Virus record (IMG/VR): IMGVR_UViG_3300031951_000001
Span: 1-64,000 of that record
Reading direction: 5' to 3' (one strand)
DNA length: 64,000 nt
How positions within the stretch are numbered: position 1 is the first letter of the stretch; every line of letters begins with the position of its first letter. Positions 3,345-49,987 of the stretch are shown here, in pieces. The notes under the pieces were generated by a model, which did not search any database, had not been told where the DNA came from, and was given only the letters and a program-made list of their open reading frames with translations. Both the position numbers and the translations under genes were made by a program.

Positions 3345-4469
3345 ATGTCGAAAACACTTAACGAATCAGAGTTACAGGAAAAAATGGTTCAAATCTACAA
3401 AGAAGAACAAAAAAAAGTTATTGAAGAAAAATGGCAAAAATTGTCAAATAAAGATAAAAAAATGGTATTGGAGATGTTAAAAATCCAATATCCTGAAAAA
3501 TCAATTTTAATTAGCGAATCAAAGTGGTACAATACTTTGGGGGATATTGTTGGCATATTTGACCCAACTGGTGTGGTTGATTTAATTAACGGTATTAGTT
3601 ATTGGAGACAAGGTGATAAGTTATTTGCCGTTTTGTCATGGATTTCCGTATTACCTTATGTAGGTGACTTAATTGCTAAACCAGTTATTGGTTTGTTTAA
3701 GATGGGAGGGGCTTCAGCGAAAGCATTCAAAGCCGCATCATTGGCCGGTGATGCCACTAAGATGGCTCAAATTGCTAAAAAAGGAGGACCGTTAGCAGGT
3801 CTTCTTACTAAAGTTAATACTTGGGCACCAAAAGTACTTGAACCTTTGGCAAAAGGAGTTAAAAAGATACCAGGTGTAGGACCGGGTTTTGTTAAAGGTG
3901 TTGAGGATTATATCAAATTATTTAAAGATGCTAATAATACTATGTCAGCAGGTGCAAAAACTGCGACAAGGCTTACTGCAAAATCAAGTAAGTTGGCGAA
4001 ACAAGGTTCAAAATTAAGTGCTGCTGAGGCAAAACAATTAAAAGCCGCATTGGATTCGGCGACGACATATAGAGGGTTTAGAGACTTCAAAGGGGGACAA
4101 AGTTGGTTAAAATACATGAAGTCAGACGCTACTTTATCATCTAAAATATCTGCCGGAGTTCCTAGATTGTGGGGAAATCCAGCAACAAGAGCTTTGATGA
4201 GAAAAACCAAATGGTATTTGGGATTGTTAGATTTTTTAGGTGTTGCTAATTTTGTTGGTCCTGATGAACTTGAAAATAAAATTGAAGATTTGGATTCTAA
4301 AATGGCCGAATACAATAATACGCCAGAGGCTCAACAAAATTGGAATGAAGATATCCAAACTACAGAACAACCGTCTCCCGAATATTCTCAGGAAGTTTCG
4401 GCGCCTGAACCACCAAAAGAAACAAATAATAAAAGTGGCGATGATATCTTTGGATTTTTATTTACATGA
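3345..4469 (+). CDS. Leader-bearing protein with pre-toxin-like helical hairpin and A/K-rich region
   Basis: TATTTAT upstream; TLNE and LISE sites; DIVGIFDPTGVVDLINGISYWRQGD..AVLSWISVLPYVGD motif. Confidence 0.55.
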   Translation: MSKTLNESELQEKMVQIYKEEQKKVIEEKWQKLSNKDKKMVLEMLKIQYPEKSILISESKWYNTLGDIVGIFDPTGVVDLINGISYWRQGDKLFAVLSWISVLPYVGDLIAKPVIGLFKMGGASAKAFKAASLAGDATKMAQIAKKGGPLAGLLTKVNTWAPKVLEPLAKGVKKIPGVGPGFVKGVEDYIKLFKDANNTMSAGAKTATRLTAKSSKLAKQGSKLSAAEAKQLKAALDSATTYRGFRDFKGGQSWLKYMKSDATLSSKISAGVPRLWGNPATRALMRKTKWYLGLLDFLGVANFVGPDELENKIEDLDSKMAEYNNTPEAQQNWNEDIQTTEQPSPEYSQEVSAPEPPKETNNKSGDDIFGFLFT

Positions 4470-5872
4470 AAAAATTAATTAACGAAAGTGGTATTAGGGA
4501 TATTAATAAATTAGCCCAAAGGTACCCAAAAGCAGAAATATACTTTCACCAAGATTTGGATGGTGTAACAACGGCAATCGCCATGAAGAACTATTTGGAA
4601 CAACATGGTATTAAGGTTGTTGATGCTCACGTAATACAATATGGTGATAAAGAATTCTCCGTTAAGAAGAACGACGCTCAAGGAGATACGATGCCTGTAT
4701 TGGTAGATTTCGCACACGGAAAACCAATGTTCGTTATTCATACAGACCACCACGATAGACAAGCGGGCGCCGAAGATACGAAATCAACATCGTTTAGACA
4801 GTCAAGGTCAAACGTTGAAACCATATCACAAATAGTTTCACCAAAAGAAGTATTCCCCAGTGAAGACATACTTCTGATTTCAACTGTGGATTCGGCAAAT
4901 TTCGCATCTCAAAATATCTCAATTGATGATGTGATTAATTATGTTTTTCGTTTAGATAAAGATAATTCCTTAAAACGGAATAAAATGATGTTAGGACTTG
5001 TTACTAACAAATTGTTATTAGCATTCAAAAACAAACCAGGGTTTCTTGAGGAATTGGTTATGGTGTGTAAACCATCTATAATGAGTATTCTTCAAAACAT
5101 TAAAAGAATAATGGTTGAGAAGGGATATGCTAAAATACCTGAATTGGAGAAGAACAAAGAGATGTATTTTCAACAGATGAAAGACTCACCAAATGTTAAA
5201 ATCGACGGAAACATAATTGTACAATATGGTGGTGATAGTATGGTGAAACCAGGTTCTTATGATAGATACACACCTTTTAAAAATAATCCTGATAAGGATT
5301 TCTTAGTTATTGCTTGGCCAATGGGATTAGTACAAGCATCATGTAATCCTTTTAAGAAAGAAAGGGCGTTAAAAGGAATCGATTTAGGAAAAATCAAAGA
5401 TGAGGTATTATCTAAATGGGAAAGCCAACTCAAGGAGAGAGAAATACCAATCTCAACAATTAAATGGATTTCTGAAAATACGAAAGGATTTGGTCCTGAG
5501 TCGGTAGGTTTTACATTTAAGGATTTTGTGGCATTGTATGGTAAGAATTATAAGACCAAAGAAAACGGTAGAGAAGAATTGGTCCACATTGGTGAGATGA
5601 TGGAAGTACCTTTTAGTGAATTACCTGAAGAACATAGAGAGATGTTAGATAAGGTAACTGTAAACGCTTGGGATTTAATTGACGCGAGTTCAGGGGGTCA
5701 TAAATGTATAACTAACATATCAGGTCTTAATTATTTGGGTAGAAGTAATAGACCACCAAAAGGTAAGTACAAGTATGACCCTGATAAGGATGATAGTCCA
5801 TATGTTAAATTTACAAAAATGATACAGAATGAGTTTGTTAGACTGTTAAAAGAAAAGATAACAAATTCTTAA
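4466..5872 (+). CDS. DHH-family phosphoesterase
   Basis: HQDLDG, LVDF and TDHHD motifs; C-terminal SGGH as in DHHA1. Confidence 0.75.
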   Translation: MKKLINESGIRDINKLAQRYPKAEIYFHQDLDGVTTAIAMKNYLEQHGIKVVDAHVIQYGDKEFSVKKNDAQGDTMPVLVDFAHGKPMFVIHTDHHDRQAGAEDTKSTSFRQSRSNVETISQIVSPKEVFPSEDILLISTVDSANFASQNISIDDVINYVFRLDKDNSLKRNKMMLGLVTNKLLLAFKNKPGFLEELVMVCKPSIMSILQNIKRIMVEKGYAKIPELEKNKEMYFQQMKDSPNVKIDGNIIVQYGGDSMVKPGSYDRYTPFKNNPDKDFLVIAWPMGLVQASCNPFKKERALKGIDLGKIKDEVLSKWESQLKEREIPISTIKWISENTKGFGPESVGFTFKDFVALYGKNYKTKENGREELVHIGEMMEVPFSELPEEHREMLDKVTVNAWDLIDASSGGHKCITNISGLNYLGRSNRPPKGKYKYDPDKDDSPYVKFTKMIQNEFVRLLKEKITNS

Positions 5873-6210
5873 AACTCAACGAAGTCACCTTCAGATATAT
5901 TCATCCTTTTACAACTACCGCCCCTCAATTCTAAAATAGTATCGCCCTCGCTACAGTAGTTTTTACAGTCATCACCTTTACATGGGGGACAACTGTGAAA
6001 TATTTTTGTGATTTGGTTATCTTTAATGAATACTATATCTAAATCGATTACACAGTTTTTCATCCAAAAACAATTTTCAGAATTATCCATTAAAAATAAC
6101 ATTCCGTTAAAATCAGGACCGAATTTTCTACCCATCATTCCCTTTTGAGTGTGTTCAGGAGTGAAAACAGTTTTGACTTTGAATTTTCGATTATTTATAC
6201 TTATAATCAT
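5869..6210 (-). CDS. DUF192 family protein
   Basis: QKGMMGR..GMLF..FWMKNCVIDLDIVFI..ILELRGG; start set at ATG 6210. Confidence 0.85.
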   Translation of the reverse strand: MIISINNRKFKVKTVFTPEHTQKGMMGRKFGPDFNGMLFLMDNSENCFWMKNCVIDLDIVFIKDNQITKIFHSCPPCKGDDCKNYCSEGDTILELRGGSCKRMNISEGDFVEF

Positions 6211-6234
6211 AAACATAAATATAACGAAAACTGA

Positions 6235-6660
6235 ATGGAGAACATAAAAAGGTACGCTGGGATAATTGTTAAGCACAAAGATGAAGTTTTATTGTGTAAA
6301 AGAAACGCTGATAATGATTTACCTGGTGTTTGGTCCATACCTGCCGGAAGATTAGAAGATGATGAAAACCCTACTTTGGGGGCTAAAAGAGAATTTCATG
6401 AAGAGACAAATGTTAAAGTAAAAGATAAGATTGAGCTTTGTGGGTTTATTAATAGAACAACTCGTGACGGTAAAAAAGTAAAAGGGTTGATGTATGTGTT
6501 TTTATGGGAGGTAAATAAGAAAGTAAAACCTGATTTGGAAAACGCTATTGACGGAGACGAACATACTGAATGTGGGTATTTTGGTATAGATAATTTACCC
6601 GAACACGATGAAAATGATAAATTGATGTCGTTAATCAAAAATATTTTGAAAAAATCGTGA
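6235..6660 (+). CDS. NUDIX hydrolase
   Basis: Nudix box GRLEDDENPTLGAKREFHEETN. Confidence 0.9.
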   Translation: MENIKRYAGIIVKHKDEVLLCKRNADNDLPGVWSIPAGRLEDDENPTLGAKREFHEETNVKVKDKIELCGFINRTTRDGKKVKGLMYVFLWEVNKKVKPDLENAIDGDEHTECGYFGIDNLPEHDENDKLMSLIKNILKKS

Positions 6661-11068: not shown

Positions 11069-11608
11069 ATGAAGTTTATTATTAACGAACGCCAATATAA
11101 AATCATAAATGAACAGTTAGGATATTCTTCAGGAGGTTATCCTGAAGTTATGAAAACTAGTCAAAAAGAATTTGAAAAGCAATATCCTACTTTAACAAAT
11201 TTTTTAAGAGATTTATCCTTATGGTTTGTTCCATATATCGGTCCGTATTTGGTGGCGGCCAAAGGTACTTATGAAGGTATTGAATCCATAAAAAAAGGAG
11301 ATAATTTTATGGGTATGGTACAATTAATAACCAGCCCTTTGGCATTAGGAAAATATTTGAGGTTTGCCAAATTATACGGAATGGAACAAAATGAATTTAT
11401 GAAAATGTTAGAAATGATATATAAAAGTGGACTACCTGTTTTAAAAAATGAAGGGGTAGAGCAATTTTTTAGGTGGGGACAACAAAATTTCGGAACGACC
11501 AAATTTAATGCTTTTGTCGAAAACATAAAAGATACAACACAATTACAGAGTTTTTTAAACAGTTTAAATGATGAAGAAAAGAAAAAAATTGAAATTAAAA
11601 AAACATAA
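11069..11608 (+). CDS. Leader-bearing protein with hydrophobic hairpin
   Basis: MKFIINERQY..IINE leader; WFVPYIGPYL motif; start ATG 11069 after TATTTAT. Confidence 0.65.
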   Translation: MKFIINERQYKIINEQLGYSSGGYPEVMKTSQKEFEKQYPTLTNFLRDLSLWFVPYIGPYLVAAKGTYEGIESIKKGDNFMGMVQLITSPLALGKYLRFAKLYGMEQNEFMKMLEMIYKSGLPVLKNEGVEQFFRWGQQNFGTTKFNAFVENIKDTTQLQSFLNSLNDEEKKKIEIKKT

Positions 11609-11610
11609 TT

Positions 11611-12162
11611 ATGAAGTTTATAATCACTGAAGAACAACAAGATAGATTAAGTGCTTACGACAAAGCTCAAAAAATGTTTTTTAAGTATTGGGATAAGAAT
11701 GGACCCAAAGTTGACGATATGTTTTTTAAGTTGTTTGGTTTTACCAATTTTGGTTTAGAAATAGGTGGAAATGTCTTGAGGAGGGGTAATATCTATAGAA
11801 TGTTAATAAATTGGTATGGAGGTAAAAATGCGAAATTAAAGGCGATTGAAATGTTGAAAGAAAAAAACTTCACCGTTAATTATTGTGGTGGTTATAACTT
11901 TGATTTTAGTGTTATTGATTATACGGTTGAGGAAGATACGGGTGAAATTTATGTAACTGCCAAACCTGACATTGAAAACGGCACTGTAATATTAATCATG
12001 GTAGGAGGTGAGAGTCAATCATTAAAAGATGCTTTGAATAACGAAGAGTATGGATGGGAGATAGAAGGAGAAATAGCCGATTGTATCTATGAATTATTAC
12101 ATCAAAAAATCACAGAAACAACCGGCTATGAGATAGGAGTTGAAAAATTAATTATCGATTAA
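11611..12162 (+). CDS. Leader-bearing hypothetical protein
   Basis: MKFIITEEQQ leader. Confidence 0.7.
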   Translation: MKFIITEEQQDRLSAYDKAQKMFFKYWDKNGPKVDDMFFKLFGFTNFGLEIGGNVLRRGNIYRMLINWYGGKNAKLKAIEMLKEKNFTVNYCGGYNFDFSVIDYTVEEDTGEIYVTAKPDIENGTVILIMVGGESQSLKDALNNEEYGWEIEGEIADCIYELLHQKITETTGYEIGVEKLIID

Positions 12163-28682: not shown

Positions 28683-28988
28683 TTATTGTTTTCTTAATTT
28701 GGCTCGTTTGATTGTAGGGGAGTTCTTGGAATAGAACTTTTTATACATAGGGTCGATAACATCATCATCTACATCCCTAGTAGAGATGTTCTCAATATCA
28801 AGTTCATCATCTGAATATTCTTCGGGTTCACCCTGATTCATAAAAGAATTTTTATACCACTTTCCACTACCCATAGATGATGGGTCATGGTAGAGATAAT
28901 CATTATCCTGTTCTTCTTCACTTTCTTTTATAATTCTTTTAACGAGTTTAATCAAATCAGATTCAGTTAATCTTACAACTTTTTTCAT
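28683..28988 (-). CDS. Leader-bearing acidic protein
   Basis: MKKVVRLTESDLIKLVKRIIKE. Confidence 0.7.
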   Translation of the reverse strand: MKKVVRLTESDLIKLVKRIIKESEEEQDNDYLYHDPSSMGSGKWYKNSFMNQGEPEEYSDDELDIENISTRDVDDDVIDPMYKKFYSKNSPTIKRAKLRKQ

Positions 28989-29787: not shown

Positions 29788-31644
29788 ATGAATCTCAAAG
29801 AATCAATTAAAAGAATATTAAGGGAAGAAACCGATATACCACTTAAAATTAGAAGGAGGATTTTACCCAAACTAATTGAAAATGCGTTTCAAACGGCATT
29901 GGACGGTAATACAATGTTGAAAACCAAGCCAGGTTCCATGTTACACAAAGCTTCTTTTATAACGTTCGCAAATTTCGTTATTGATGATATGGTTGAGTAT
30001 ATGGAGGACCAAATAAACATGGATGGAAATTCATATTATTATGGTAATGACGATGCTTATATCGAAGAAGTGAGAAACCCGCTCCTTAAACATTATGGTG
30101 ATAGAATAAAAAAGAGATATGATGATATTGTTGGGGGGGATGTTTTTGAATCAGTATTAGAAGAAACAAATATACCACTCCAAGTTAAAAGGAGGATTAA
30201 TGGTGACTCATTGGCCGAATTAATACATGATATTAAAAGTTTAATTGATTCTGGCTACGATGAGTCAGATGCGATATACGATACGGTAAGACAATTTATC
30301 GCTTCAAAACAATTCAAACTTAACAATGATTCAGAACAATCTTATTGGGATTCATACATTGAAGTGGAAGAACCATTAGTTGATTATCTGAAAAGTAAAT
30401 TGAATATACGAGAGTCCGTATTAAGGGAAGAAACCGAAGAATATAAAGTAAAATTGGTTACAAATATAATCTATACTTTATATGATAATATATCATTTAT
30501 AAAACAATCAACTTTCAACGGAAAACCTTTACTTATAATTTATTTTGACTCTGATGATACTGCAGCAAACATTGAGTCGTGGTTTGATGAAAAAATATCA
30601 AGAGATATTGAGGAATGGACTTCAGGAAATATTGTTGTTTGTCCAGATTGGATATTTAATTGGGATTCGAGAAAGAAAAATGCTGATGTGTTTATAAACA
30701 CTGAACTTATAAAATATGATAACTTGGGGAATGTTGTTAATGAGTCAATATTAAGGGAAGAAATGAGCTCAATGATGAGAAGAATATTCAGAAGGGTTGA
30801 CCCCGAAAAGATGGACGGAATATTCGGAGAAGGTCTTGATACAATGACAACAAGATACATTCAGAACCAACATAATTGGCACGCAATGAACTTAGATAAG
30901 TTTAAGTCAGGTATTGTATCATATGTTATTGTTGATTTATGTATGAAATACTCTGACGTATGTTTTGGAGCTGGGGATTTTTACAACCAAGTATGGGAAT
31001 TCTTATTGAGTCATTATTCGGATGTAATGGAAGAAAGATGGAATGAGATTATGTCGGGAGAGGTTAATGAATCGGTATTAAAGGAAGATAGAAAGGCAAA
31101 AGAAACTATAAGTGATTTGGTTAAAGAGTTTGGTTTGATTAAAACTTCAGATATGGTTGGGTTGTCGATATCACAAATTGTTAAAGTAACTAATATACCG
31201 ATTGATTCAGATACCGCCAACCAAATTTTGGTCGAAATGATGAATAACGATGAATTGAAAACCAAATACAAAGATTTTAATATTCACGCAAGTTCAAATG
31301 ACGTGTTTTATTGGGAAGCAATGGTAAAAACAGGACATTTCCATGATGATATGATTGAAAACATAACAGTTGCGGCAACACCATTTTGGGATGGAGTCAA
31401 ATATACACCTGTTGAAATAGAATGGTATACATTACTTAATTATTATGGGGTAACTGTTTATGAAACATCAGGTGAAGGAAATTTTTATAAAGAACTTAAA
31501 CATCAAACAAATTTTGAAAGTGTTGATGAGTTATTGAATTGGTATGAGGAATTCTATTTACCTGAAGTGTATAATATGGTAATGAATACGTTATTACCAA
31601 AAATGCATAAGTTGGTTGATTACGAAATAAAACAAAGAGGTTAG
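29788..31644 (+). CDS. Five-module leader-punctuated protein (polyprotein-like)
   Basis: Start ATG 29788 after TATTTAT; ILREE then four internal ES(V/I)L(E/R/K)E(E/D) junctions. Confidence 0.7.
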   Translation: MNLKESIKRILREETDIPLKIRRRILPKLIENAFQTALDGNTMLKTKPGSMLHKASFITFANFVIDDMVEYMEDQINMDGNSYYYGNDDAYIEEVRNPLLKHYGDRIKKRYDDIVGGDVFESVLEETNIPLQVKRRINGDSLAELIHDIKSLIDSGYDESDAIYDTVRQFIASKQFKLNNDSEQSYWDSYIEVEEPLVDYLKSKLNIRESVLREETEEYKVKLVTNIIYTLYDNISFIKQSTFNGKPLLIIYFDSDDTAANIESWFDEKISRDIEEWTSGNIVVCPDWIFNWDSRKKNADVFINTELIKYDNLGNVVNESILREEMSSMMRRIFRRVDPEKMDGIFGEGLDTMTTRYIQNQHNWHAMNLDKFKSGIVSYVIVDLCMKYSDVCFGAGDFYNQVWEFLLSHYSDVMEERWNEIMSGEVNESVLKEDRKAKETISDLVKEFGLIKTSDMVGLSISQIVKVTNIPIDSDTANQILVEMMNNDELKTKYKDFNIHASSNDVFYWEAMVKTGHFHDDMIENITVAATPFWDGVKYTPVEIEWYTLLNYYGVTVYETSGEGNFYKELKHQTNFESVDELLNWYEEFYLPEVYNMVMNTLLPKMHKLVDYEIKQRG

Positions 31645-32024
31645 ACGATACGTCCGCTTCTTACATCAAAGACCTTATAGTCGGGGAGCATAGATTCAAA
31701 AGCATCAGAGATAAAGTATTTACCATTGGTCATCCAAACAGGGTGAGGTAACATCTCCTCAAAAAACCCATCATACTTATGGCTGTAGTATAAATCACCC
31801 GTTTTACCATCACTAAAAATAGAAAACATCATCATAGGATTACCGGCTGAATCGTATAGGACAATTCTATTACTATCCTCACTATATGATTCAATCTCAT
31901 CAACAATATAAGGAACGATGATATGTTTAAACTTATTGTATAGGTCCTCATACTCAAAATCCATCCAATGACGTTCAAGTTCGGATATAAGATTAAGTTG
32001 TGATTCGGTGATAAGGTATTTCAT
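31641..32024 (-). CDS. Paralogue array member 1
   Basis: MKYLITESQL leader; own TATTTAT. Confidence 0.75.
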   Translation of the reverse strand: MKYLITESQLNLISELERHWMDFEYEDLYNKFKHIIVPYIVDEIESYSEDSNRIVLYDSAGNPMMMFSIFSDGKTGDLYYSHKYDGFFEEMLPHPVWMTNGKYFISDAFESMLPDYKVFDVRSGRIV

Positions 32025-32036: not shown

Positions 32037-32372
32037 TTACATTGATAGTTCGGCGTCACCTATCAGACCACCGTATACTTTGACATCCGAAGGTTCAATC
32101 TTACCGGAGTTAGAGTTTTCCTCAACAAAATGGGTGAGAATTAATTCGGCCTCATCCTTATCAATAGAAAAGAATTCACATACACTGTTTATAAAATCTT
32201 CGGATATTATTAAAGTACCTGACCTTCTTCTATACCTCATAACGGCGTGTGTATCGTCTAAAGAATAAACAAAACTTATATAACTTGTCCAATAAACCGC
32301 CTCAAGATTTAGTGAATTAATATAATTAAAAATAATACTGTTTAATTTAGATTCGGTGATTAGGAATTTCAT
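32037..32372 (-). CDS. Paralogue array member 2
   Basis: MKFLITESKLNSIIFNYI. Confidence 0.75.
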   Translation of the reverse strand: MKFLITESKLNSIIFNYINSLNLEAVYWTSYISFVYSLDDTHAVMRYRRRSGTLIISEDFINSVCEFFSIDKDEAELILTHFVEENSNSGKIEPSDVKVYGGLIGDAELSM

Positions 32373-32731: not shown

Positions 32732-33157
32732 ATGAGTATTAAAGAATCCATAAGAAGAATATTAAGGGAAGAAACTTTACTTAAAACCAATATAAAAGAC
32801 ATGATTTCCAAACATGGATTTTATATAACGTCCAAAATGTTAGGTGGAGTTGATATTATGAATAGTATTCTTAATATAAAAGGTTCACAGGAAGAAATGA
32901 TTTTCATTGTTAAAGCCATAATGGAACATGATGTTGAAGTTTTGGGTAATGTATGTAACTATCAAATAGTTCCGACCATGTACTCATTTAAACTATATGT
33001 AGAAATACCAAAATATTATCCCAACCATTCCGATGATTATTACCCAAACAAACAAAAAACATTTGAGGCGAGAGATTATATATCTGACTTAATAAAAAAG
33101 TTTGGAAATGAAAAGGTGAGAGGATATAATATATACGTTCAGGTAGGAAATTGTTAA
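32732..33157 (+). CDS. Leader-bearing hypothetical protein
   Basis: MSIKESIRRILREE; TATTTAT upstream. Confidence 0.7.
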   Translation: MSIKESIRRILREETLLKTNIKDMISKHGFYITSKMLGGVDIMNSILNIKGSQEEMIFIVKAIMEHDVEVLGNVCNYQIVPTMYSFKLYVEIPKYYPNHSDDYYPNKQKTFEARDYISDLIKKFGNEKVRGYNIYVQVGNC

Positions 33158-36499: not shown

Positions 36500-36877
36500 A
36501 TGAAAAAAACAGTTAGACTTACAGAATCAGATTTAGTTAATTTGATTAAGAGAATTATAAAAGAAGAAGAGGGAACGGACTTATCTAATGTTAGAGCCGA
36601 GTTTATAGATTTAATAAAGAGTATGAATTGGGAGTTTAATCCAAATCATAACATGTCAGGGTTTGCGTTTGTCCCTAAAAAAGGGGACATTGGATATAGT
36701 GGGTTTAAGCAAGACAGTTTCAATATGTATATTGGCAAACCATTAATCTTTAATGGTAGTGATGATAATGAATATTGTTATTTAGATAAGAATAATAATT
36801 TTGTTCTCAAGAGATTTGGTAAAAAGTCAACCTCCCCTTTATCATCAGGGATTGGTGGTATTAAGAATTTATTGTGA
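36500..36877 (+). CDS. Leader-bearing protein
   Basis: MKKTVRLTESDLVNLIKRIIKE; TATTTAT upstream. Confidence 0.75.
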   Translation: MKKTVRLTESDLVNLIKRIIKEEEGTDLSNVRAEFIDLIKSMNWEFNPNHNMSGFAFVPKKGDIGYSGFKQDSFNMYIGKPLIFNGSDDNEYCYLDKNNNFVLKRFGKKSTSPLSSGIGGIKNLL

Positions 36878-37246: not shown

Positions 37247-37621
37247 ATGAAAAAAGTTATAAGATTAACCGAATCGGATTTAGTTCGTTTAGTAAAACAA
37301 GTTATAAATGAGCAATCTATTCCTGAACCCGAAAAGATTTCCGCTGACCATGCTAAATTTGAGGAATATGTAAAGACAAAATGGGGTTGGAAGGAAGACC
37401 CTTATGCTTCAATTGACTTTGAAGGAGGTGATAACAAGTTTACAATATGTGATGGTCCGTGTGGTTCACTTATTCCTGGTACAGATGTTAATAGTGTTAC
37501 ATGGGATGGAAAAACTAAAACGGTATATGGAACCGTATCATTTGGAGTTGACCCCAAACCAATTTCATGGAGTTATAAATTTAACCAAATGAAAACATGG
37601 TTTGATTCTTCTTTCGGATAA
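37247..37621 (+). CDS. Leader-bearing protein
   Basis: MKKVIRLTESDL..VINE; start ATG 37247. Confidence 0.75.
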   Translation: MKKVIRLTESDLVRLVKQVINEQSIPEPEKISADHAKFEEYVKTKWGWKEDPYASIDFEGGDNKFTICDGPCGSLIPGTDVNSVTWDGKTKTVYGTVSFGVDPKPISWSYKFNQMKTWFDSSFG

Positions 37622-37724: not shown

Positions 37725-39036
37725 ATGAGATATATTATAACGGAAGAACAAAATAATATTATTCGTGTCCTACGAAGAATTGACCAAGACCATGATTTGA
37801 TTCAGGATATTGTTGTTGAGGGAATGGAAATGTATTTGTGTGATTATGACCCCTTTAATTATTTTTATGAATTTTTATGTCGGAACTCAGCATTTACTTA
37901 TCTTTTAAATTATTTTGATAACCCACGTCAAGAAGGGTTCATGAAAATGGAAGATTATATGACTGATTATATTAAGGAAAACTTTAAGGAAATGATTGTT
38001 ACCTATTGGGAAGATAATAAGGAATATTGTTAAAAAATTTTTTTCCGTTCCGATTCCCCCTACCCCCTTTTTTATTTTGATGTATTTATTGTTATATGAA
38101 TCTCACAGAATTATCACATGTTTTAACGAAGGTGTATAACAAACTTGGAAACAAGTATCTTGTTGATAATTATATTACCGAGCCGTTTGAGTTTGAGGTT
38201 AAGGTAAAATATGGTGACCCATATGAATATTATAAGTATTATGCCGAGGTTTATAGTATTCCTGATATGCCACATGATTTTAGGTATAGACCTGAAGTTA
38301 GAAAAGAAAAAAAGAAGTATGCCGTTGGAGCCGATATTAGCGTTGTTGGGAGTGATTTTAAAAGTATGATTGAATATGTTGACCCTGAAAAGAAACAGTC
38401 CATTGGTGTTAACTTTATGAATGTTAAAAAATAATTTTTTCCCTTCGGGTTTGTAATCCCCCTACCCCCTTTTTTGTTTGAGATATATTTATCTATATGA
38501 AATACATTCTTACGGAGTCACAGTATGCTGGGCTGATGAAACTAATTAAAAAACAAGAAGAGGATTTGAGTTTTTTGAAAAGTAGTGTGGTCTCTACAAT
38601 CGAACATGACGTAACAGATTTTTTAAACTCCAAGTTTCAAGGTAGATTTGGACACTATGGTTATACGCAATATCCCGTATTTTTTATTTATCCTGATAAA
38701 TTAACCTCTGAACTTACAAAATATAATAGGAGAGAACCGGCTTTGGTTATTGCTTATAATATAAAAAAATCTACAGGCAAAGTTGAAATTAATATTTTTT
38801 GGAATACTAAAGTGAGTTTTAATTATAAAACAGAAGATGGTAAATGGAAAAGAAATAAGTATCCCCAAAATACCATTAAGTGGGATTATATGAATAACCC
38901 TGACGGAGAAGAGGAATTCTTATCTAAATTGGAAAAGACCATTAACGGAAGAATAAGTGAAAGGGCTCAAAACAAAATTATTGATGATTTTGAAAAACTT
39001 TATAGAGAAGAATATCAAACTAGTATATTAAATTAA
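37725..39036 (+). CDS. Three hypothetical proteins (37725..38033, 38096..38434, 38497..39036)
   Basis: Each has its own TATTTAT; leaders MRYIITEEQ, MNLTE and MKYILTESQ. Confidence 0.7.
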
Positions 39037-39106: not shown

Positions 39107-40325
39107 ATGAAAAAGATAATTAGACTTACCGAATCCGAACTAATCAAAGTTGTAAAACGTATTATTAACGAACAGCATTTTGATGAATTTATGACATCAT
39201 CTGAAACATCTTCAGTCTCTAATGTCGTACAAAATCTTGAAAGAGAAATGGGTGATTACAAAAATAAAATGGATGGATTTTTATCCGATTTGAAATCATC
39301 AGGTGATATTGATTGGAATAGATTCTTGAAGCAAGTTAGAAATCAAACAAGTGAAATATTTCATAAGTATGATGATGAATCTTTATCTAGGGAGGACTCA
39401 TTAAACCTCTTCAATACATTCTCCCAACTCCAATCAAACCTTCTTAATCATTATAAAGGACAATACAGAAATTCTTAATTAATATAATATTATGAAAAAG
39501 ATAATTAGACTTACAGAATCAGATTTAACAAGAATTGTTAAACGTGCTATTAACGAATCGGACCGAGCTTATGGTCATGAAGAAATAGGTAAACTATATT
39601 CTAAATTGGGAGACGATGAGGATGTTGAATTGAGTGACGAGTCTGGCGAATTGTCAGGTGGGATTGTTAAGAAGATTGACTATGTAAAGAATATGCTGAG
39701 AAAAGCCATAAAGAATGAGGATTGGGAAATGGTTAATAGAGCCATGAGTTATCTTAACATGAAATTATAAAAAATAGTTTTTTCATTATATTTATAATAA
39801 AACAATTATAATGGGAAAAAAAATTCGATTGACCGAATCTGAGTTAACCAAATTAATAAAGAAAATGATTTCGGAAGACTTGGAAATGATGGACGTTTCC
39901 TCAGATTCTGATTATTATAAAGCAAGAAAACGAGAAGTATCCATACCCAAAGACGATTTGGCGTTACTAGGTCATATGGCCACAAGGTATTGTGAAAGAA
40001 AAGAAAATCTACCAGATTGTCAAAGAGTTCAGGATTTGTATTCCCGTTATCAATTATTTATGTAAAATTAAAGAAAATGAAAAAACCTATTAGATTAACC
40101 GAATCCGACCTTAATAGAATTGTTAAAAAAACAATTATGGAAATGGGAGGTATGACCAATTCAATTGAGATGTATGACTTCAATAAAAGAAAAATGATAA
40201 ATGGATTACATCAATTGAAATCCTCCATAGATAGTGGAGATAATGAAACTGCATCACATATTGTACAAGTTTTACTTTTAACATTAAACGAACTTGATTC
40301 TTATGTTGATGAAATGAAAAGATAA
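39107..40325 (+). CDS. Four RLTE(S)(D/E)L leader proteins (39107..39478, 39492..39770, 39811..40065, 40077..40325)
   Basis: Shared N-terminal 20 aa, unrelated C-termini. Confidence 0.75.
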
Positions 40326-40329: not shown

Positions 40330-41223
40330 ATGAAAAATTTATATTTTTTAGACAACTCAGAAAGAGAAAGAATTCTCAATCTACATGAATCGGCAACCAA
40401 GAATCAATATTTGATTAACGAACAATCGGCAGATAAAGATATTGCCGGTAGAATATATAAAGCATCGTATGGACCTGGTACAGGTAGTGATTTTTTAACC
40501 GCAATACAAGCAATATCTAGTTTACAACAATTGAAAAATGTTGATGCTCTTTTGAAGAGTGGTTATGGTCAACTTGGTCTACAAGGTCAAATTAACGATG
40601 AATTTAACCCACAAGAAGCAACCGATAGAGCAAGCTTAAAGGCGTTTCAGAGTCACTTGGCTAAACTTGGTGCTACGATGACATTCGACCAAAATAGAAA
40701 CGAAAGTGTTGTTATTAATTACCAATCAACCGTTCAAGCTCAACCTGAGACACAAAAAACAGAAGAGCAACAAGTGGCTGATTGGTCACAAAAATTCCCA
40801 TGTGTTGTAAACTATCCCGGAGCCCAAAAAATTGCCAATCCCCGTACCGATACTAATGTTTCAGGCACTGTTGCTTATAAAATAGGTGAATTTACTTATT
40901 TTATTGATGGTAACCAATATGGTAAAGGAAGTTATAGTACCTACACATGTGATGATGCATTTTTCAAAAATTCGTCAAGAGTACAAGCCAATCCAGAACA
41001 AAAGGGAGGTAAGACAAGTGGTGCTCCACAACCTTACAAACATGCTCAACATGTAACAAATGTTCAGAACAAATTAAAGGAGATTGACCCGGCCTTCGCT
41101 GGTGGAGTTACAAAAACAGGTCAAATGGACCAAGCTACTATAAACAAGCTCATGGAAATACTTATGTCAAAAAAGATGCCTGAGACTAAAGTTGAGACAC
41201 CGGCTCCTGAAGCTGAAGGTTAA
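40330..41223 (+). CDS. Leader-bearing protein with possible C-terminal peptidoglycan-binding-like helices
   Basis: MKNLYFLDNSERERILNLHE leader; VQNKL..TGQMDQATI. Confidence 0.55.
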   Translation: MKNLYFLDNSERERILNLHESATKNQYLINEQSADKDIAGRIYKASYGPGTGSDFLTAIQAISSLQQLKNVDALLKSGYGQLGLQGQINDEFNPQEATDRASLKAFQSHLAKLGATMTFDQNRNESVVINYQSTVQAQPETQKTEEQQVADWSQKFPCVVNYPGAQKIANPRTDTNVSGTVAYKIGEFTYFIDGNQYGKGSYSTYTCDDAFFKNSSRVQANPEQKGGKTSGAPQPYKHAQHVTNVQNKLKEIDPAFAGGVTKTGQMDQATINKLMEILMSKKMPETKVETPAPEAEG

Positions 41224-41237
41224 AAAAGATACCAATT

Positions 41238-43477: not shown

Positions 43478-44732
43478 ATGAATATAAATTTTGAAACCCC
43501 CCAACTAATGTTTAAACTCACCAAGTATTTTGGTGAAATGGAAGATGGACGAACATTTGCTATAGTTGTTCGTTCAGGAGATGATTATGATTCAGTGGAA
43601 GATATTGAAACTGATGACGATGAATTCACACAAGAAGAGCTTGATGCTATTGAAAAAAGTTTTTATGATTCTTTATAATTTATAACTATGAAAAAAGAAA
43701 AAGCAAAAATGGCCGCGCCAAAGAAAGAAAAAAAGAAAAAGGTTGCCGAAAAAACAATTGTAACCGCTCCGAAAACAATTTCAGTTAAAATGGTAGAGTA
43801 TTATAATACCATGGTTGTACACGAACCAATTGAAATCAATGTTGAGGATTATCCCGAACTAAACGGGATGTCAGAGGAACAAATTAAGGATTACATTAAA
43901 GAGAATTGGTCTGACATGAAATCAACGAATGAGGAATGGTACGAATCCCTTTATGACGAATGTAGTCAATCCGACGTAATGAGAGAAAAGATTACAGGTG
44001 AAGAACAAGAATGTTACTTCGATTAATTGAATTATAGTACTATTTATAAGTAATAAACCATTAACAAAAAAATAGTACTATGAAAAACGGTGGTGGTTGT
44101 GGTTGTGGAAAATAATTTCCCAAACACGTTAAACAGAACAAAGGGAAGAGTAATCTTCCCTTTTTTTTCATATAAACTATAATTATTTTTATGACAAACG
44201 AACAAAAAGCACAACAATACGGAGAGTTATTGAACGAACACACAAGATTGGGTAATCAGATTAACGAAATTAAAGGACAAAGTATTGATTTGAATCAAAA
44301 TCAGTTGAGTCAAATCGGAAGACTGGAAACCCAACAAATTCGAATTATGAATTACATTAATAGACTGCTCTCACAGTAATCATCTATTGTATATTTATAT
44401 ACATGAAGATTGTATTAACAGAATCTCAAATGGAAAAGTTGATTGATGAGCAATTGACTAAACCTAAAGAGACCGAGGATTTTTCAGAGTATATCAGAAA
44501 ATTTAACACGATTAAACTTAATAATAAGACATTTACTCCTGACGATTTTTTATCGAAGTTAAATAATTCACCAATCCAACTTAATTTATTCCATATTCAA
44601 ACAGATGGGTATAATATCGGAACGGGAGCTTTATCTGCTAAAGGTAAAATTGGTAATCTCAATTTGATATTGAGTGTGAAACCGGTAGGAGATTTCAAAA
44701 CAGGTTTGGTTACAATAACAAAAACGATATAA
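43478..44732 (+). CDS. Four hypothetical proteins (43478..43678, 43688..44026, 44191..44379, 44403..44732)
   Basis: Co-oriented ORFs; the last has an MKIVLTESQM..LIDE leader. Confidence 0.6.
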
Positions 44733-44760
44733 ACCTTATATTTATTATAAAACAAAAGAT

Positions 44761-45174
44761 ATGAAACATTTATTGAATGACTTATCCGAAGAGGAAAAAA
44801 ATAGAATTCGTGAGCAACACACTGGCGGTAAGAAACTTGTAATCGAAAATTTCGATAAACTTGTTAATACCAAACTTGGTGATGTTAAACCATTGTTGCG
44901 GGAACAAACTGAGGAAGCAAATATTACAAAATCTATTCAGTGTTTTTTAAATAAAAGAATGAATGCGGGTTTAGTAGTTGATGGTTTAGCCGGTGATAAT
45001 ACAAGTAAAGCCGTTGAAAAATACCAAAGTAACATTGGAGTTTTTCCTACTGATGGGATATTGGGCCCCGATACAAAAGATAAAATGCCACAATCTGACG
45101 TTAAAATATTAGAGGAATGTATAAATGAACATTCGGATATTATTGATAAAGTATTAAGGTGGTTTGGATTTTAA
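44761..45174 (+). CDS. Leader-bearing peptidoglycan-binding (PGBD-like) protein
   Basis: MKHLLNDLSEEEKNRIREQH..LLRE leader; IQCFLN..VDGLAGDNTSKAVEKYQ..DGILGPDT. Confidence 0.75.
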   Translation: MKHLLNDLSEEEKNRIREQHTGGKKLVIENFDKLVNTKLGDVKPLLREQTEEANITKSIQCFLNKRMNAGLVVDGLAGDNTSKAVEKYQSNIGVFPTDGILGPDTKDKMPQSDVKILEECINEHSDIIDKVLRWFGF

Positions 45175-45204
45175 AACTATAAAAGGGGTCTTATGACCCC
45201 TTTT

Positions 45205-45405
45205 TTAATGACGGTTACACGGAGCTTTGAAATGAACCAAGTCGTTTCCTTTATTCATTTTCTGAACTTTCTTTGAATGCTTTTGTCCTCGTTTTGCATG
45301 TGCCGAATAATTGTAACCACGTTGAGGTGATGAACAAGAACCGAGAAACAGGATTGACAAAATGATTGTTGCGAACAGAACAAATGCTTTGAATGGGTTT
45401 TTCAT
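45205..45405 (-). CDS. Small basic lipoprotein
   Basis: Lipobox LGS|C. Confidence 0.6.
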   Translation of the reverse strand: MKNPFKAFVLFATIILSILFLGSCSSPQRGYNYSAHAKRGQKHSKKVQKMNKGNDLVHFKAPCNRH

Positions 45406-45482
45406 AATTGTATGGGTTTAAAATTGTGGTACAAATATACTTCACTTTTTTAAATCTACAAATATTTTTTATAAAAAAACTT

Positions 45483-46154
45483 ATGAACATAGTACATAGT
45501 CCAGGAGGACCGGTGGTTAAAGAACTTGATGATTTTTTGAGGAGTGATAGATGTCCTGTCTCCGAATACCCAATACAAGTAAGACATTCTCATGGGGATG
45601 AAAAACACATAACTTTTATGATTGAACAATTAACCGAAGATATTGTGAAAGACCCTATGGTATTAGGCCCACTACATAGGGATGCGGTCCATGAAGTTTG
45701 GACATTTAGCGAATACAACATTCATCTAATGAATCAAGCGGGGATTACTAAAGCGAGATTGATTAAATTAGAACCTACCGATGAGTATAGGGCGGAAATT
45801 CTTTCATACAATCCTGACAACACTTATGACTATGATGTATCTTTCTTTGGTTGGATGAGTGAAAGAAGATACAATATGATGTACCAATTACAAAGTAGAG
45901 GATTGAGGGTTATGTATGGACAGGATGGTTGGGGTGAGCATAGAGACAGAATTATTGCTAAAAGCAAAGTTATGGTTAACGTACATTATGCGGAAGATTT
46001 TAAATGTTTTGAACAAATCAGATGTTTTCCTTGGATGTGTACCGGTAAAATAGTTGTGAGTGAAACTAGTTATGATACGGACGAAAGAGTAATATTCGCC
46101 GATTATGACAAATTAGCCGATACTGTTGCCGAAGTAATTAGAACAAGATTTTAA
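45483..46154 (+). CDS. GT-B glycosyltransferase-like protein
   Basis: DVSFFG..ERR..IIAKSKVMVNVH..FEQIR..KIVVSE; start ATG 45483. Confidence 0.7.
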   Translation: MNIVHSPGGPVVKELDDFLRSDRCPVSEYPIQVRHSHGDEKHITFMIEQLTEDIVKDPMVLGPLHRDAVHEVWTFSEYNIHLMNQAGITKARLIKLEPTDEYRAEILSYNPDNTYDYDVSFFGWMSERRYNMMYQLQSRGLRVMYGQDGWGEHRDRIIAKSKVMVNVHYAEDFKCFEQIRCFPWMCTGKIVVSETSYDTDERVIFADYDKLADTVAEVIRTRF

Positions 46155-47089: not shown

Positions 47090-48110
47090 ATGAAAAAGTC
47101 ATTAGTTATGTTATCACTATTCTCATTTTTATTTGCTGGTTGTACATTGACCATTGGAGATGGATGTAAATGTGGTGAGAATGGATGTAGTAAGCCTGCG
47201 CAAATTCAAATAATTGAAAAAGAACCTCAAGTTGAGGAAACAACAGATTTTCCATCTGACGAATTCCATGTAGTTGAGGACACCACAGAAAATTTCTAAA
47301 AAATGGTTTTTACAATAACTGAAAAGAAAAAACAGGCTTTATTGTCGGTCCTACAATCATTCTTCGATGGTAAGCTAGAAGAATATAGGGATTTGGATGA
47401 TGCCGGTGAATTGGAATATTTTACCGGAGCATTTGTAAATAACATAGATAAAATAGAGATTGCTGACATCAGAAGGTCCGAAGGTATATGGTCCGTTGAT
47501 TTGATATTCCATATGAATAGAATTTACTCATATGCTGATGAAGATTTGATTTATGATTTATCTTCAGGATTAACCGATTATATTGGTGAAAACGATATAA
47601 ACGTATCACAACAAGAAGCGGAATATGGCATCTGAATTAGAAAGACTGTCTGATAAAGTATTGTTTCAAATTATAAAACAAATCGATGAAAATTGTGAGT
47701 CTAATAGTATTTCGTTAGAATCTGAATTTGGTGATGAAATTATCACTGTTATTGACCAAACTCTCAAAATTTTTGGAATAATTGATAATCCAAAATATAT
47801 TGATGATGAATTCTTATGGACAGTATTGAAAATGAACATGAATAAATTATCTGATGATAGATTGGTGGGAAATTTAGAACGGCCAGAAATTAAGGAATAT
47901 GAATTTGATATTGATGTAAGTGAGACGGTTTATCAGACAAGTTCATGGACACATCGAATAGAATCATATGGAAATCCATATAGAATAGCGAGAGCCATGG
48001 AATATAACGGAGATTTAGATTATTGGGAGGGAAGACAAGGTTATACCGATATTAACGACTCAGAAACTAATGAGATAAGAATAGATAAAAGAAGTTTCAA
48101 AGAGATTTAA
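47090..48110 (+). CDS. Lipoprotein (47090..47299) and two hypothetical proteins (47303..47635, 47625..48110)
   Basis: Lipobox FAG|C; coupled ORFs. Confidence 0.6.
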
Positions 48111-48874: not shown

Positions 48875-48936
48875 ATTAATAAATAGTCTATGGGCACGCT
48901 TGTTGATATTTATACAATAATATACAAACAAAAAAA

Positions 48937-49269
48937 ATGAAAAAGATAATTACTTTGGTTTTTTTGATGATGTCCATTATGTCTTTTGGACAAAAATTTA
49001 ATGCCGAGTATAATTTGGTTATTGATTACAATGGTAAGGAAAGACTTGAAAAAAATCATTCAGGAGTTTGGACCGTATCCGACTCAACCTTGTATCAGTT
49101 TTATGATAACGACACTTTAGAATATAAAATTTCAGAAATAAAAGGTAGAAATGTTTTTCATGTAAATGATTTTGGAGAAACAGTTAAATTTTTATTTAAC
49201 GCAAATGGAGATGTTGTAAGAACTAATATGACAAGACCAAATCAATATCTTATTTACAGAAAAAGATAA
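48937..49269 (+). CDS. Secreted protein
   Basis: MKKIITLVFLMMSIMSFG|Q. Confidence 0.7.
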   Translation: MKKIITLVFLMMSIMSFGQKFNAEYNLVIDYNGKERLEKNHSGVWTVSDSTLYQFYDNDTLEYKISEIKGRNVFHVNDFGETVKFLFNANGDVVRTNMTRPNQYLIYRKR

Positions 49270-49285
49270 TTTTGTATTTATTAGT

Positions 49286-49987
49286 ATGGAAAATCTTGAT
49301 TACTTGAAACTTCAAAAGAAAATCGTCAATTCTGAAAATTTAGATGAGTTAAAGGACGCGGTAAAAGAAGTTAATCAATTTGTCAAAGATAAAAAAATAA
49401 AATCAGGTTCTGACGAGTTTAAAAAACTACAGGAAAGAATCAACATAGTATTAATCAAATTGAGAAAGAAATTAAAAACAGAACAAAAAACTATTGTTGT
49501 TACAGAGCAACAATTAAGTAGAATAGTTAAATTATTGTCGGAAGTTGATTCAACGTCACAGGACATTATTGATAGAATTCTTGACCAAATTTCAAAACAC
49601 GGGGAAGAATCATTGTCTCCATCACAAAAGAAAAAGTTACAAGATTTTAGTTCGGGTAAATCATTAGAATATGATAAACCAAAATTCAGAGATAGACCAG
49701 GTGTAACATTTGAATCACAAGAAGAACCCACTGTTTCATTTACATTACTTGAAACAATTGAAACTGAAGATGGTCATGAATACTTGGGTGAAGTTGTGTT
49801 TATGGAAAATGAATACACCGGATTTGTAACTACCGATGAGAATGAAGAACTCACATCAATTGAGTTTGAAAACTTAAATACACAAAAAGATTTATTAGAA
49901 GACGCGGGAGACAATGTCCCCCACATCGTAAGTTTTTTCGAAGGTGTGGTAATGGGATTAGCCGATGAGGACAATCCTTACGATTGA
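49286..49987 (+). CDS. Modular protein with internal leader
   Basis: Internal KTIVVTEQQLSRIVKLLSE; TATTTAT upstream. Confidence 0.65.
   Translation: MENLDYLKLQKKIVNSENLDELKDAVKEVNQFVKDKKIKSGSDEFKKLQERINIVLIKLRKKLKTEQKTIVVTEQQLSRIVKLLSEVDSTSQDIIDRILDQISKHGEESLSPSQKKKLQDFSSGKSLEYDKPKFRDRPGVTFESQEEPTVSFTLLETIETEDGHEYLGEVVFMENEYTGFVTTDENEELTSIEFENLNTQKDLLEDAGDNVPHIVSFFEGVVMGLADEDNPYD

What the first reader, a model, noticed from the sequence alone, without database searches (positions are those of the whole stretch)
3345..49987. About 30 unrelated proteins share short N-terminal leaders ending in L/I-x-E: a candidate capsid-targeting cargo system
Seen: four leader types recur on otherwise unrelated proteins. 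MKK(V/I)RLTESDL..IIKE/INE at 28988, 36500, 37247, 39107, 39492, 39811, 40077. MK(F/Y)(L/I)ITE(S/E)(Q/K) at 7897, 11069, 11611, 26653, 28588, the six array genes, 37725, 38497, 41238, 44403. M.(L/I)KE(S/T)I..ILREE at 27378, 29788, 32732. L...E(K/R).RI...H at 40330, 44761. Most carry TATTTAT just upstream. Established: T4 internal head proteins carry a ~10-aa capsid-targeting leader that the prohead protease gp21 removes after Glu at (I/L)-x-E. Inference: this phage packages a large, modular set of proteins into its head, probably for ejection into the host, by attaching a portable promoter-plus-leader to diverse payloads.
Basis: partly seen in the sequence, partly recalled or inferred. Interest (0 to 1): 0.75.

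Follow-up and report, generated by a model that had tools for sequence, protein, structure and literature searches.

The report
Shared N-terminal leaders, likely capsid-targeting propeptides
A 322-kb T4-like freshwater jumbo phage puts one family of short N-terminal leaders, built around Leu/Ile-x-Glu sites, on about 40 otherwise unrelated proteins; this looks like a much enlarged version of phage T4's system for loading proteins into the capsid, but packaging and cleavage are not yet shown.

Summary
Types A to D are variants of one motif: Met, 2-6 residues, [L/I]-x-E, an amphipathic helix, and usually a second [L/I/V]-x-E near residue 22. The motif sits at the first Met in 34 of 353 genes. 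It occurs in only 1 of 2585 internal segments.

The phage is T4-like. It has a gp21-type prohead protease, and its capsid protein carries I-N-E|A exactly where T4 gp23 is cut at L-T-E|A.

Leader genes use the stand-alone TATTTAT promoter-like element that also precedes the sheath, adaptor, terminase and protease genes. They almost never use the host-like TAnnTTTG element. Synonymous sites in the leader are saturated, so selection acts on the peptide, not on a mobile DNA cassette.

AlphaFold2 places the leader outside or at the edge of two different payload folds.

The best reading (about 0.55) is a T4-style capsid-targeting and cleavage propeptide with an unusually large cargo set. It would be a new variant of a known kind. 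Packaging and cleavage remain untested.

The parts
28683..28988 (-). Type A leader gene, 101 aa (MKKVVRLTESDL...IIKE)
36500..36877 (+). Type A leader gene, 125 aa; TATTTAT upstream
37247..37621 (+). Type A leader gene, 124 aa; terminator-like sequence and TATTTAT upstream
39107..39478 (+). Type A leader gene, 123 aa. AF2 model: leader residues 1-23, disordered linker 24-35, three-helix-bundle payload
39492..39770 (+). Type A leader gene, 92 aa; a family widespread in metagenomes
39811..40065 (+). Type A leader gene, 84 aa
40077..40325 (+). Type A leader gene, 82 aa
7897..8202 (+). Type B leader gene, 101 aa; variant with I-T-Q instead of I-T-E
11069..11608 (+). Type B leader gene, 179 aa (MKFIINE...IINEQ)
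11611..12162 (+). Type B leader gene, 183 aa
26653..27054 (+). Type B leader gene, 133 aa
28190..28588 (-). Type B leader gene, 132 aa; variant with I-T-Q
31641..32024 (-). Type B leader gene in the array, 127 aa; its payload is not related to the other five by BLASTP
32037..32372 (-). Array paralogue, type B leader, 111 aa
32388..32699 (-). Array paralogue, type B leader, 103 aa
33159..33476 (-). Array paralogue, type B leader, 105 aa
33473..33838 (-). Array paralogue, type B leader, 121 aa
33856..34179 (-). Array paralogue, type B leader, 107 aa. AF2 pLDDT 93; residues 1-6 form a flexible tail; the fold has no PDB match
37725..38033 (+). Type B leader gene, 102 aa
38497..39036 (+). Type B leader gene, 179 aa
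41238..42449 (+). Type B/D leader gene, 403 aa (MKFIITEEEKK...LITEQ)
44403..44732 (+). Type B leader gene, 109 aa
27378..28193 (+). Type C leader gene, 271 aa (MNLKETI..ILREE)
29788..31644 (+). Type C leader gene, 618 aa; terminator-like sequence and TATTTAT upstream
32732..33157 (+). Type C leader gene, 141 aa, lying inside the array on the opposite strand
40330..41223 (+). Type D leader gene, 297 aa (..SERERILNLHE..LINEQ)
44761..45174 (+). Type D leader gene, 137 aa; the payload holds a PG_binding_1 domain

Best explanation
The leaders are most likely T4-style prohead-targeting propeptides.

Proposed mechanism (inferred, not shown):
1. Late in infection, about 40 unrelated proteins are made from TATTTAT promoters, together with the head proteins.
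2. The N-terminal module (Met, 2-6 residues, [L/I]-x-E, an amphipathic helix, and often a second [L/I/V]-x-E followed by Gln or Ser) docks them to the scaffolding core inside the assembling prohead.
3. The gp21-type serine protease then cuts after the conserved Glu residues. This frees the payloads inside the capsid, probably for delivery with the DNA.

Shown: the motif, its strict N-terminal position, its conservation at the peptide level, the protease gene, the conserved capsid-protein cleavage site, the shared promoter class, and the modular structure.

Inferred: targeting, cleavage, packaging and ejection.
For: 1. The phage is T4-like. It has a Peptidase_S77 protease at genome 117086-117811. 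The protease is 34% identical to T4 gp21, and the segments ELNHP and SSRG align with their T4 counterparts. The Gp23-type capsid gene is at 120692-122545. The gene order is terminase, portal, protease, an unannotated 506-aa gene in the position of T4 gene 22, then the capsid gene.

2. The protease's specificity is probably conserved. The capsid protein has I-N-E60|A aligned with T4 gp23 L-T-E65|A. That Glu column is invariant across T4, Flavobacterium phage immuto, Microcystis phage Mel-JY01 and six members of this clade.

3. In the leader alignment only Met1 and the Glu of the first [L/I]-x-E are invariant. In 116 type A homologues the second site reads I/V/L, a free position, then an invariant Glu. 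That is the pattern expected of a P3-x-P1 cleavage motif.

4. Position is strictly N-terminal.

5. [L/I]-x-E is enriched near the N-terminus across the genome. With Glu at residues 6-8 there are 43 genes against 10 expected, and with Glu at 21-23 there are 26. A second, independent gene call gives 72 genes with a site in the first 10 residues against 26 expected (2.8-fold). In T4, where the system is proven, the ratio is 1.65, and the hits include ipII, ipIII, gp67, gp68, gp21, gp22, gp24 and Alt. In immuto it is 1.28.

6. T4's own processed proteins start in the same style, for example Alt MELITE and gp24 MAKINELLRE.

7. Leader genes carry TATTTAT (odds ratio 11) and avoid the host-like TAnnTTTG (1 of 41 against 44 of 312). 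TATTTAT also precedes the sheath, head-tail adaptor, terminase and protease genes.

8. In the 123-aa family the leader is followed by a hypervariable, indel-rich linker that AF2 models as disordered, ahead of a confident payload fold. In the array family residues 1-6 are a flexible tail before the fold.

9. Five complete relatives each have the protease and 15-25 leader ORFs.

10. The T4 precedent for a capsid-targeting sequence (CTS) and L/I-x-E cleavage is described in PMC9026906 and PMC3012670.
Against: - There is no proteomic or biochemical evidence of packaging or cleavage for any member.
- No cultured relative carries the leader.
- [L/I]-x-E is a low-information motif: about 9% of N-termini would have one by chance.
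- The leader is far more conserved (R-L-T-E-S-D-L) than cleavage alone needs, and it does not resemble the T4 CTS.
- About 12% of all genes would be capsid cargo, which is more than in any known CTS system.
- Payloads are mostly acidic (median pI 5.2). From memory, the T4 internal proteins are basic.
- Three payloads are directed at peptidoglycan: GH19, and PG_binding_1 twice. They could equally be lysis proteins.
- The expression time of the TATTTAT class is inferred from gene content only. A gp41-like helicase gene also carries it.
- The S77-bearing relatives immuto, Mel-JY01 and two huge uncultured phages lack the leader.
- Eight of 120 homologues carry a second, internal copy.
Confidence: 0.55

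Rival explanations
1. The leader is a shared docking helix for a partner other than the prohead and is not cleaved. One candidate partner is the phage's own Hsp70 (a client tag); another is some host or phage hub protein.
For: The conserved part is a 15-residue amphipathic helix, much more constrained than a cleavage site needs. The genome encodes a full-length Hsp70. The basic-hydrophobic start (MKKVIR-L) resembles, from memory, DnaK-binding cores. Internal copies exist in 8 of 120 homologues. One leader gene lies in a bacterial chromosome with no phage context.
Against: This does not explain why Glu is the only invariant residue. It does not explain why P2 of the second site is free while P3 and P1 are fixed, or why the motif must sit at the very N-terminus. 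It also leaves the parallel with T4's processed proteins unexplained.
Confidence: 0.2
2. The leader targets proteins to the virion but not to the head interior. Examples would be tail or baseplate accessory proteins, or surface-attached lysins.
For: The genes are in the late-type promoter class. Three payloads bind or cut peptidoglycan, which is typical of tail-associated lysins.
Against: The [L/I]-x-E logic, the similar [L/I]-x-E-bearing N-termini of the capsid protein and of the protein in the scaffold position, and the leader-like gene between the protease gene and that gene all point to the prohead.
Confidence: 0.08
3. The genes are one old paralogue family whose C-terminal parts have diverged beyond recognition. 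The N-terminus is simply the slowest-evolving remnant and has no targeting role.
For: Tandem arrays and clustering of leader genes. Synonymous saturation shows great age.
Against: The payloads have different architectures: a three-helix bundle, an alpha/beta fold, GH19 and PG_binding_1. Lengths run from 52 to 618 aa. Disordered linkers separate leader and payload.
Confidence: 0.07
4. The conservation acts on the nucleic acid, either as a translation-initiation or mRNA element or as a mobile promoter cassette of the PeSL type.
For: The distance from TATTTAT to the ATG falls in two tight classes, -11 to -13 and -21 to -23. The predicted 5' leaders are very short and lack a Shine-Dalgarno sequence. 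Terminator-like sites are enriched (25 against 10.2).
Against: Codons in the leader vary freely at synonymous sites. Leu uses four codons at each of its two invariant positions, Thr three and Ser four. Third-position identity is 0.555 against 0.49 expected.
Confidence: 0.03

Closest known systems
T4 internal proteins IPI/IPII/IPIII and Alt with their capsid targeting sequence (CTS), processed by prohead protease gp21
   Same: A T4-type protease and capsid protein. A short N-terminal tag ending in L/I-x-E on otherwise unrelated proteins. A tag of 7-22 residues, against 10-19 in T4 (PMC9026906). T4 Alt starts MELITE, and type B leaders start MK(F/Y)(L/I)ITE.
   Different: There is no sequence similarity to MKTYQEFIAE. 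Type A and D leaders are longer, contain a conserved helix and have two sites. There are about 40 carriers instead of a handful. Payloads are mostly acidic. Nothing has been shown experimentally.
Polymorphic internal-protein (ip) loci of T-even phages: diverse proteins that share only the CTS (cited in PMC3012670 and PMC9026906)
   Same: The same principle: a hyperplastic region holds unrelated, fast-turning-over genes united only by the targeting leader. In T-evens they are thought to be anti-defence cargo.
   Different: The scale is about ten times larger. The leader family, the host phylum (probably Bacteroidota) and the phage clade (260-330 kb) are all different.
Inner-body and ejection proteins of phiKZ, 201phi2-1 and SPN3US, processed at S/A-x-E by gp175/gp245 (PMC9026906, PMC10052503)
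   Same: A jumbo phage with dozens of head-internal proteins cleaved after Glu by a gp21-related protease. Propeptides there also carry redundant sites.
   Different: Those propeptides are long and are not a shared, recognisable leader. The motif there has a small residue at P3, not Leu or Ile. Those phages are not T4-like.
PeSL (promoter-early stem-loop) mobile regulatory cassettes of T4-type phages (recalled from memory, Arbiol et al. 2010)
   Same: Small genes are individually flanked by a terminator-like stem-loop and a promoter in a plastic genome region.
   Different: PeSLs are conserved at the DNA level and mediate shuffling. Here the DNA is saturated at synonymous sites and the conservation is in the peptide. 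The promoter is of the late type, not the early type.

Membership tests
T4-type CTS / gp21-processed prohead proteins | The phage encodes a gp21-type (Peptidase S77) prohead protease | tested here: met
   PF03420 at 87 bits, genome 117245-117670; 34% identity to T4 gp21
T4-type CTS / gp21-processed prohead proteins | A short N-terminal propeptide ending in L/I-x-E | tested here: met
   37 of 41 leaders have the site within the first 11 residues. 30 of 41 have a second [L/I/V]-x-E at residues 14-36, against 37% of other genes
T4-type CTS / gp21-processed prohead proteins | Sequence similarity to the T4 CTS MKTYQEFIAE | tested here: not met
   The leader profile finds nothing significant in T4 (best E = 0.05, at an unrelated place). 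ipII and ipIII start MKTYQEFIAE
T4-type CTS / gp21-processed prohead proteins | Only the leader is shared; the mature parts are unrelated | tested here: met
   BLASTP of the payloads; two different AF2 folds; different Pfam domains
T4-type CTS / gp21-processed prohead proteins | The same protease specificity acts on the major capsid protein | tested here: inconclusive
   I-N-E|A aligns with the T4 gp23 L-T-E|A site and the Glu is invariant. Cleavage itself was not observed
T4-type CTS / gp21-processed prohead proteins | Expression at the time of head assembly | tested here: inconclusive
   Leader genes share the TATTTAT class with the sheath, adaptor, terminase and protease genes and avoid host-like promoters. 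No expression data could be used: RNA runs hold only 7% of the sampled words of window 36400-42400, and only as contigs
T4-type CTS / gp21-processed prohead proteins | The protein is present inside the prohead or virion | not testable with these tools
   No cultured member and no proteome
T4-type CTS / gp21-processed prohead proteins | The propeptide is removed, leaving a new N-terminus after Glu | not testable with these tools
   Needs mass spectrometry or an in vitro cleavage assay
T4-type CTS / gp21-processed prohead proteins | The leader alone is sufficient to encapsidate a foreign protein | not testable with these tools
   Needs genetics in a cultured host-phage pair
Sec or lipoprotein signal peptides | A hydrophobic core of about 10-15 residues after a basic N-terminus | tested here: not met
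   The leaders are charged and amphipathic. True signal peptides in the same genome form a separate N-terminal cluster
PeSL-type mobile regulatory cassette | DNA-level conservation of the repeated unit | tested here: not met
   Third-position identity is 0.555 against 0.49 expected

The most novel reading that the evidence does not exclude
A widespread clade of 260-330-kb T4-like freshwater phages, with probable Bacteroidota hosts, uses one conserved bipartite propeptide to load 15-40 or more unrelated, fast-turning-over proteins into each capsid. The propeptide is a flexible tag with [L/I]-T-E, a docking helix, and a second [L/I/V]-x-E followed by Gln or Ser. The cargo includes peptidoglycan-binding and peptidoglycan-cutting proteins and new folds. 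This would be by far the largest CTS-type cargo repertoire known, and a natural modular protein-delivery system.
Probability: 0.45. Interest if true: 0.72.

Novelty: new variant of a known kind. Interest (0 to 1): 0.6.

Why it matters
If true, T4's capsid-targeting principle is not a T-even curiosity. It would be an expandable cargo system that one abundant environmental phage clade has scaled to about a tenth of its genes.

The leader would then act as a sequence label for dozens of otherwise unannotatable genes, marking them as candidate ejected proteins: anti-defence, host takeover or cell-wall attack.

It would also offer a defined tag for packaging foreign proteins in phages of Bacteroidota. 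The prediction is sharp and cheap to test: new N-termini directly after L-T-E or I-x-E.

Tried and rejected
- Pfam and PHROGs on 20 leader proteins. Most have no family. Only GH19, PG_binding_1 (twice) and weak hits were found. My visual guesses of an SLT domain in 316370-317395 and a PG-binding domain in 126638-127321 were not confirmed by Pfam and are dropped.\n- ESM Atlas search on the 92-aa protein: uninformative.\n- tblastn against cultured phages: no carrier of the leader. The crAss-like hit was a chance match inside a giant protein.\n- Literature search for the motif strings: nothing relevant. The Far-T4 paper does not mention it.\n- BLASTP of T4 replication proteins, to define an early gene class: only gp41 and gp61 were found. 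The timing of the promoter class therefore rests on structural genes only.\n- Sigma-70 consensus scan: no enrichment (99 found against 98.7 expected).\n- Sequencing runs: DNA holders are lake and freshwater metagenomes.

Full report
WHAT THE WINDOW IS. The window is the first 64 kb of a 322,372-bp virus record with 34% G+C. The phage is T4-like. Pfam Peptidase_S77, the family of T4 gp21 prohead protease, matches genome 117245-117670 at 87 bits. Pfam Gp23, the major capsid protein, matches the ORF at 120692-122545. The surrounding gene order is large terminase, portal, two small unannotated genes, protease, a 318-aa gene, a 506-aa acidic gene in the position of T4 gene 22 (PHROGs found no family for it), then the capsid gene. 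The protease is 34% identical to T4 gp21, and the segments ELNHP and SSRG align with their T4 counterparts. DNA of this phage is present in many lake and freshwater metagenomes.

THE OBSERVATION. All 21 individually listed coordinates, plus the six array genes, are start codons with the stated N-termini. 28988 and 28588 are starts on the minus strand. Without presupposing any motif, comparing residues 2-16 of all 353 called genes gives 100 pairs scoring at least 30, against 3-15 pairs for windows taken at residues 20-50. Types A and B fuse into one component of 28 genes. A profile built from them and searched against all six-frame ORFs finds 28 strong hits, every one beginning at the first Met of its ORF. 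After iteration, 34 of 353 N-termini match, against 1 of 2585 internal 32-residue segments. With type C, one more type D gene and two borderline genes, the genome has about 41 carriers, 27 of them in the window. Outside the window they include a gene between the protease gene and the 506-aa gene (118104-119060) and others at 66, 75, 79, 80, 83, 85, 103, 126-130, 216 and 315-317 kb.

ONE MOTIF, NOT FOUR. An alignment of 26 leaders has only two invariant columns, Met1 and the Glu of the first [L/I]-x-E. The residue before that Glu is nearly always Thr, and the one before that is always Leu or Ile. Types A, C and D differ in the helix that follows: SDLxRIVKRII, SIKRILREE and EEKxxIxxLH. Most end in a second site, typically I-x-E followed by Gln or Ser, near residue 22. 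Across 116 metagenomic type A homologues the second site reads I/V/L, then a free position (N, K, S, R, E or M), then Glu in 116 of 116. That is the signature of a P3-x-P1 protease site.

PEPTIDE, NOT DNA. Within the leader, invariant residues use several codons: Leu uses four at each of its two invariant positions, Thr three and Ser four. Third-position identity at identical residues is 0.555, against 0.49 expected from the genome's codon usage. The leaders are therefore old and are held by selection on the peptide. This removes the mRNA-signal explanation and the idea of a recently spreading promoter-plus-leader cassette.

PAYLOADS. By BLASTP, only five of the six array genes are related to each other. 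Most payloads have no Pfam or PHROG family. The exceptions are a GH19 lysozyme/chitinase-type domain (66050-66868) and PG_binding_1 domains (314821-315891, and window 44761-45174). AlphaFold2 on the 123-aa family gives a coil at residues 1-8, a helix at 9-23 with pLDDT about 65, a disordered linker at 24-35 with pLDDT below 50, and a confident three-helix bundle. The alignment shows the same pattern: a conserved leader ending in invariant Glu-Gln, a hypervariable indel-rich linker, then a conserved domain. The array family folds with pLDDT 93 into an alpha/beta domain that has no PDB match. There only residues 1-6 (MKYLIT) are a flexible tail, and I-T-E is invariant. So the module ranges from a 7-residue tag to a 22-residue bipartite propeptide, on different folds.

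LINK TO THE PROTEASE. T4 gp21 cuts after Glu in L/I-x-E. The internal proteins carry 10-19-residue N-terminal targeting sequences that are removed in this way (PMC9026906; PMC3012670). This phage's capsid protein has I-N-E60|A aligned with the T4 gp23 segment L-T-E65|A. T4's cut at that point is recalled from memory. The Glu column is invariant across T4, immuto, Mel-JY01 and six clade members. T4's own processed proteins, read from its record, begin in the same style: gp67 MEGLIE, gp68 MLLIPE, gp21 ..LLIE, gp22 MLKEQLIAE, gp24 MAKINELLRE, Alt MELITE, and IPII/IPIII MKTYQEFIAE. The protease here also keeps an invariant L-I-E near its N-terminus. As a calibrated test, I counted genes with [L/I]-x-E in the first 10 residues. 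This phage has 72 against 26 expected (2.8-fold). T4 has 30 against 18 (1.65-fold), and the hits include the known processed proteins. The T4-like Flavobacterium phage immuto has 18 against 14. A separate gene call that kept shorter genes gave 81 against 30. Positionally, the excess sits at Glu 6-11 and 21-29.

PROMOTERS. TATTTAT is the most enriched 7-mer upstream of genes: 108 occurrences against 5.3 expected, before 108 of the 173 genes with an upstream gap of at least 25 nt. No -35-like element accompanies it. A second class resembles the Bacteroidota -7 element TAnnTTTG; that consensus is recalled from memory. TATTTAT precedes the tail sheath, head-tail adaptor, large terminase, prohead protease, the 506-aa gene, a lysin/peptidase-domain gene and several giant ORFs. 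I therefore read it as the late-type promoter, which is an inference. A gp41-like helicase gene also carries it. Leader genes carry TATTTAT in 32 of 41 cases, against 75 of 312 for other genes (p = 2e-11). They carry the host-like element in 1 of 41 cases, against 44 of 312.

DISTRIBUTION. The type A profile finds 2092 proteins in public data. Most match only the leader, and none carries an informative name. IMG/VR holds at least 588 exact pattern matches. Of 25 long records carrying the leader, 15 have the S77 protease, including all five that are at least 90% complete. Those five have 15-25 leader ORFs each, and tandem arrays of the array family were seen in the three I examined. The nearest other T4-like lineages have no significant leader match: immuto (160 kb), Mel-JY01 and two 484-595-kb uncultured phages, where the best E-value was 0.02. 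No cultured phage carries it. Among 185,579 species genomes only four loci match, all in Bacteroidota MAGs. One is a 34%-G+C single-gene island between a large signal-peptide ORF and a murF-like gene in a 56%-G+C scaffold (my reading of the ORF translations; no search was run), with CTATTTATA upstream.

INTERPRETATION. The data fit a T4-style targeting and cleavage propeptide (confidence about 0.55). The main rival is a shared docking helix for another partner, with the phage's own Hsp70 as a concrete candidate. That rival does not explain the invariant Glu, the free P2 position or the strict N-terminal placement.

Points that weaken the favoured reading:
- There is no proteomic evidence.
- [L/I]-x-E carries little information.
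- The number of carriers is very large.
- The payloads are acidic.
- The peptidoglycan-directed payloads could be lysis proteins.
- Eight of 120 homologues have an internal second copy.
- Two window leaders have Gln in place of Glu. By T4 precedent, where Asp at that position blocks processing but not targeting (PMC9026906), these would be targeted but not cut.

NOVELTY. The principle is known: T4 has the CTS, and T-even ip loci hold diverse proteins that share only the CTS. New here would be the leader family, its bipartite form, the scale (about 12% of genes), the clade and the payloads.

Noticed in passing
genome 76658-78523 (L004:12658-14520): The phage encodes a full-length Hsp70/DnaK homologue (Pfam HSP70, 855 bits).
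   Followed up: partly
window 18563-19922 and 34180-34973: Two ORF-poor stretches with higher G+C. The first holds the window's only tRNA, tRNA-Glu(ttc), at 18629-18701 (-). No other Rfam family reaches threshold anywhere in the window.
   Followed up: partly
whole genome; examples at window 35999-36020, 43406-43440 and 50470-50500: A second promoter-like class, TAnnTTTG (often TATATTTG), resembles the Bacteroidota -7 element. It precedes a different set of genes (methylase-like, signal-peptide proteins) from those preceded by TATTTAT.
   Followed up: partly
window 32037-34179 (-); also L099, L100, L101: The array family is a confident AF2 alpha/beta fold (pLDDT 93) with no PDB match. It is kept as tandem arrays of about 4-7 copies in three relatives.
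   Followed up: partly
L110:2001-2387: A type A leader gene sits as a 34%-G+C single-gene island in a 56%-G+C rumen Bacteroidales scaffold, with CTATTTATA upstream. By my reading of the ORF translations its neighbours are a large signal-peptide ORF and a murF-like gene. It looks like a phage-to-host transfer and hints at the host phylum.
   Followed up: partly
genome 171004-177834, 189391-200505, 200579-204820: Giant ORFs of 2276, 3704 and 1413 aa. The last two share the N-terminus MEFxIxKxATLPLLK. All carry TATTTAT upstream.
   Followed up: no
window 49286-49987: A DUF6576 protein carries the genome's only internal leader-like stretch that passes the profile (TIVVTEQQLSRIVKLLSE, from about residue 68).
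   Followed up: no
window 3345-4469, 4466-5872, 12823-13218, 38096-38434, 47303-47635: Further genes with [L/I]-x-E in the first 10 residues that do not match the leader profile (for example MSKTLNESEL and MKKLINESGI). They are possible weaker members. 4466-5872 has a sub-threshold DHH match.
   Followed up: no
P0058, P0062, P0066, P0070, P0071, P0083, P0095, P0109: Metagenomic homologues with two leader copies in one ORF, the second after an acidic linker. They are either gene fusions or polyprotein-like cargo.
   Followed up: partly
window 26000-45500: Intrinsic-terminator-like hairpins are enriched (25 found against 10.2 expected). Many leader genes are insulated single-gene units with a terminator-like site and then a promoter-like site.
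   Followed up: partly
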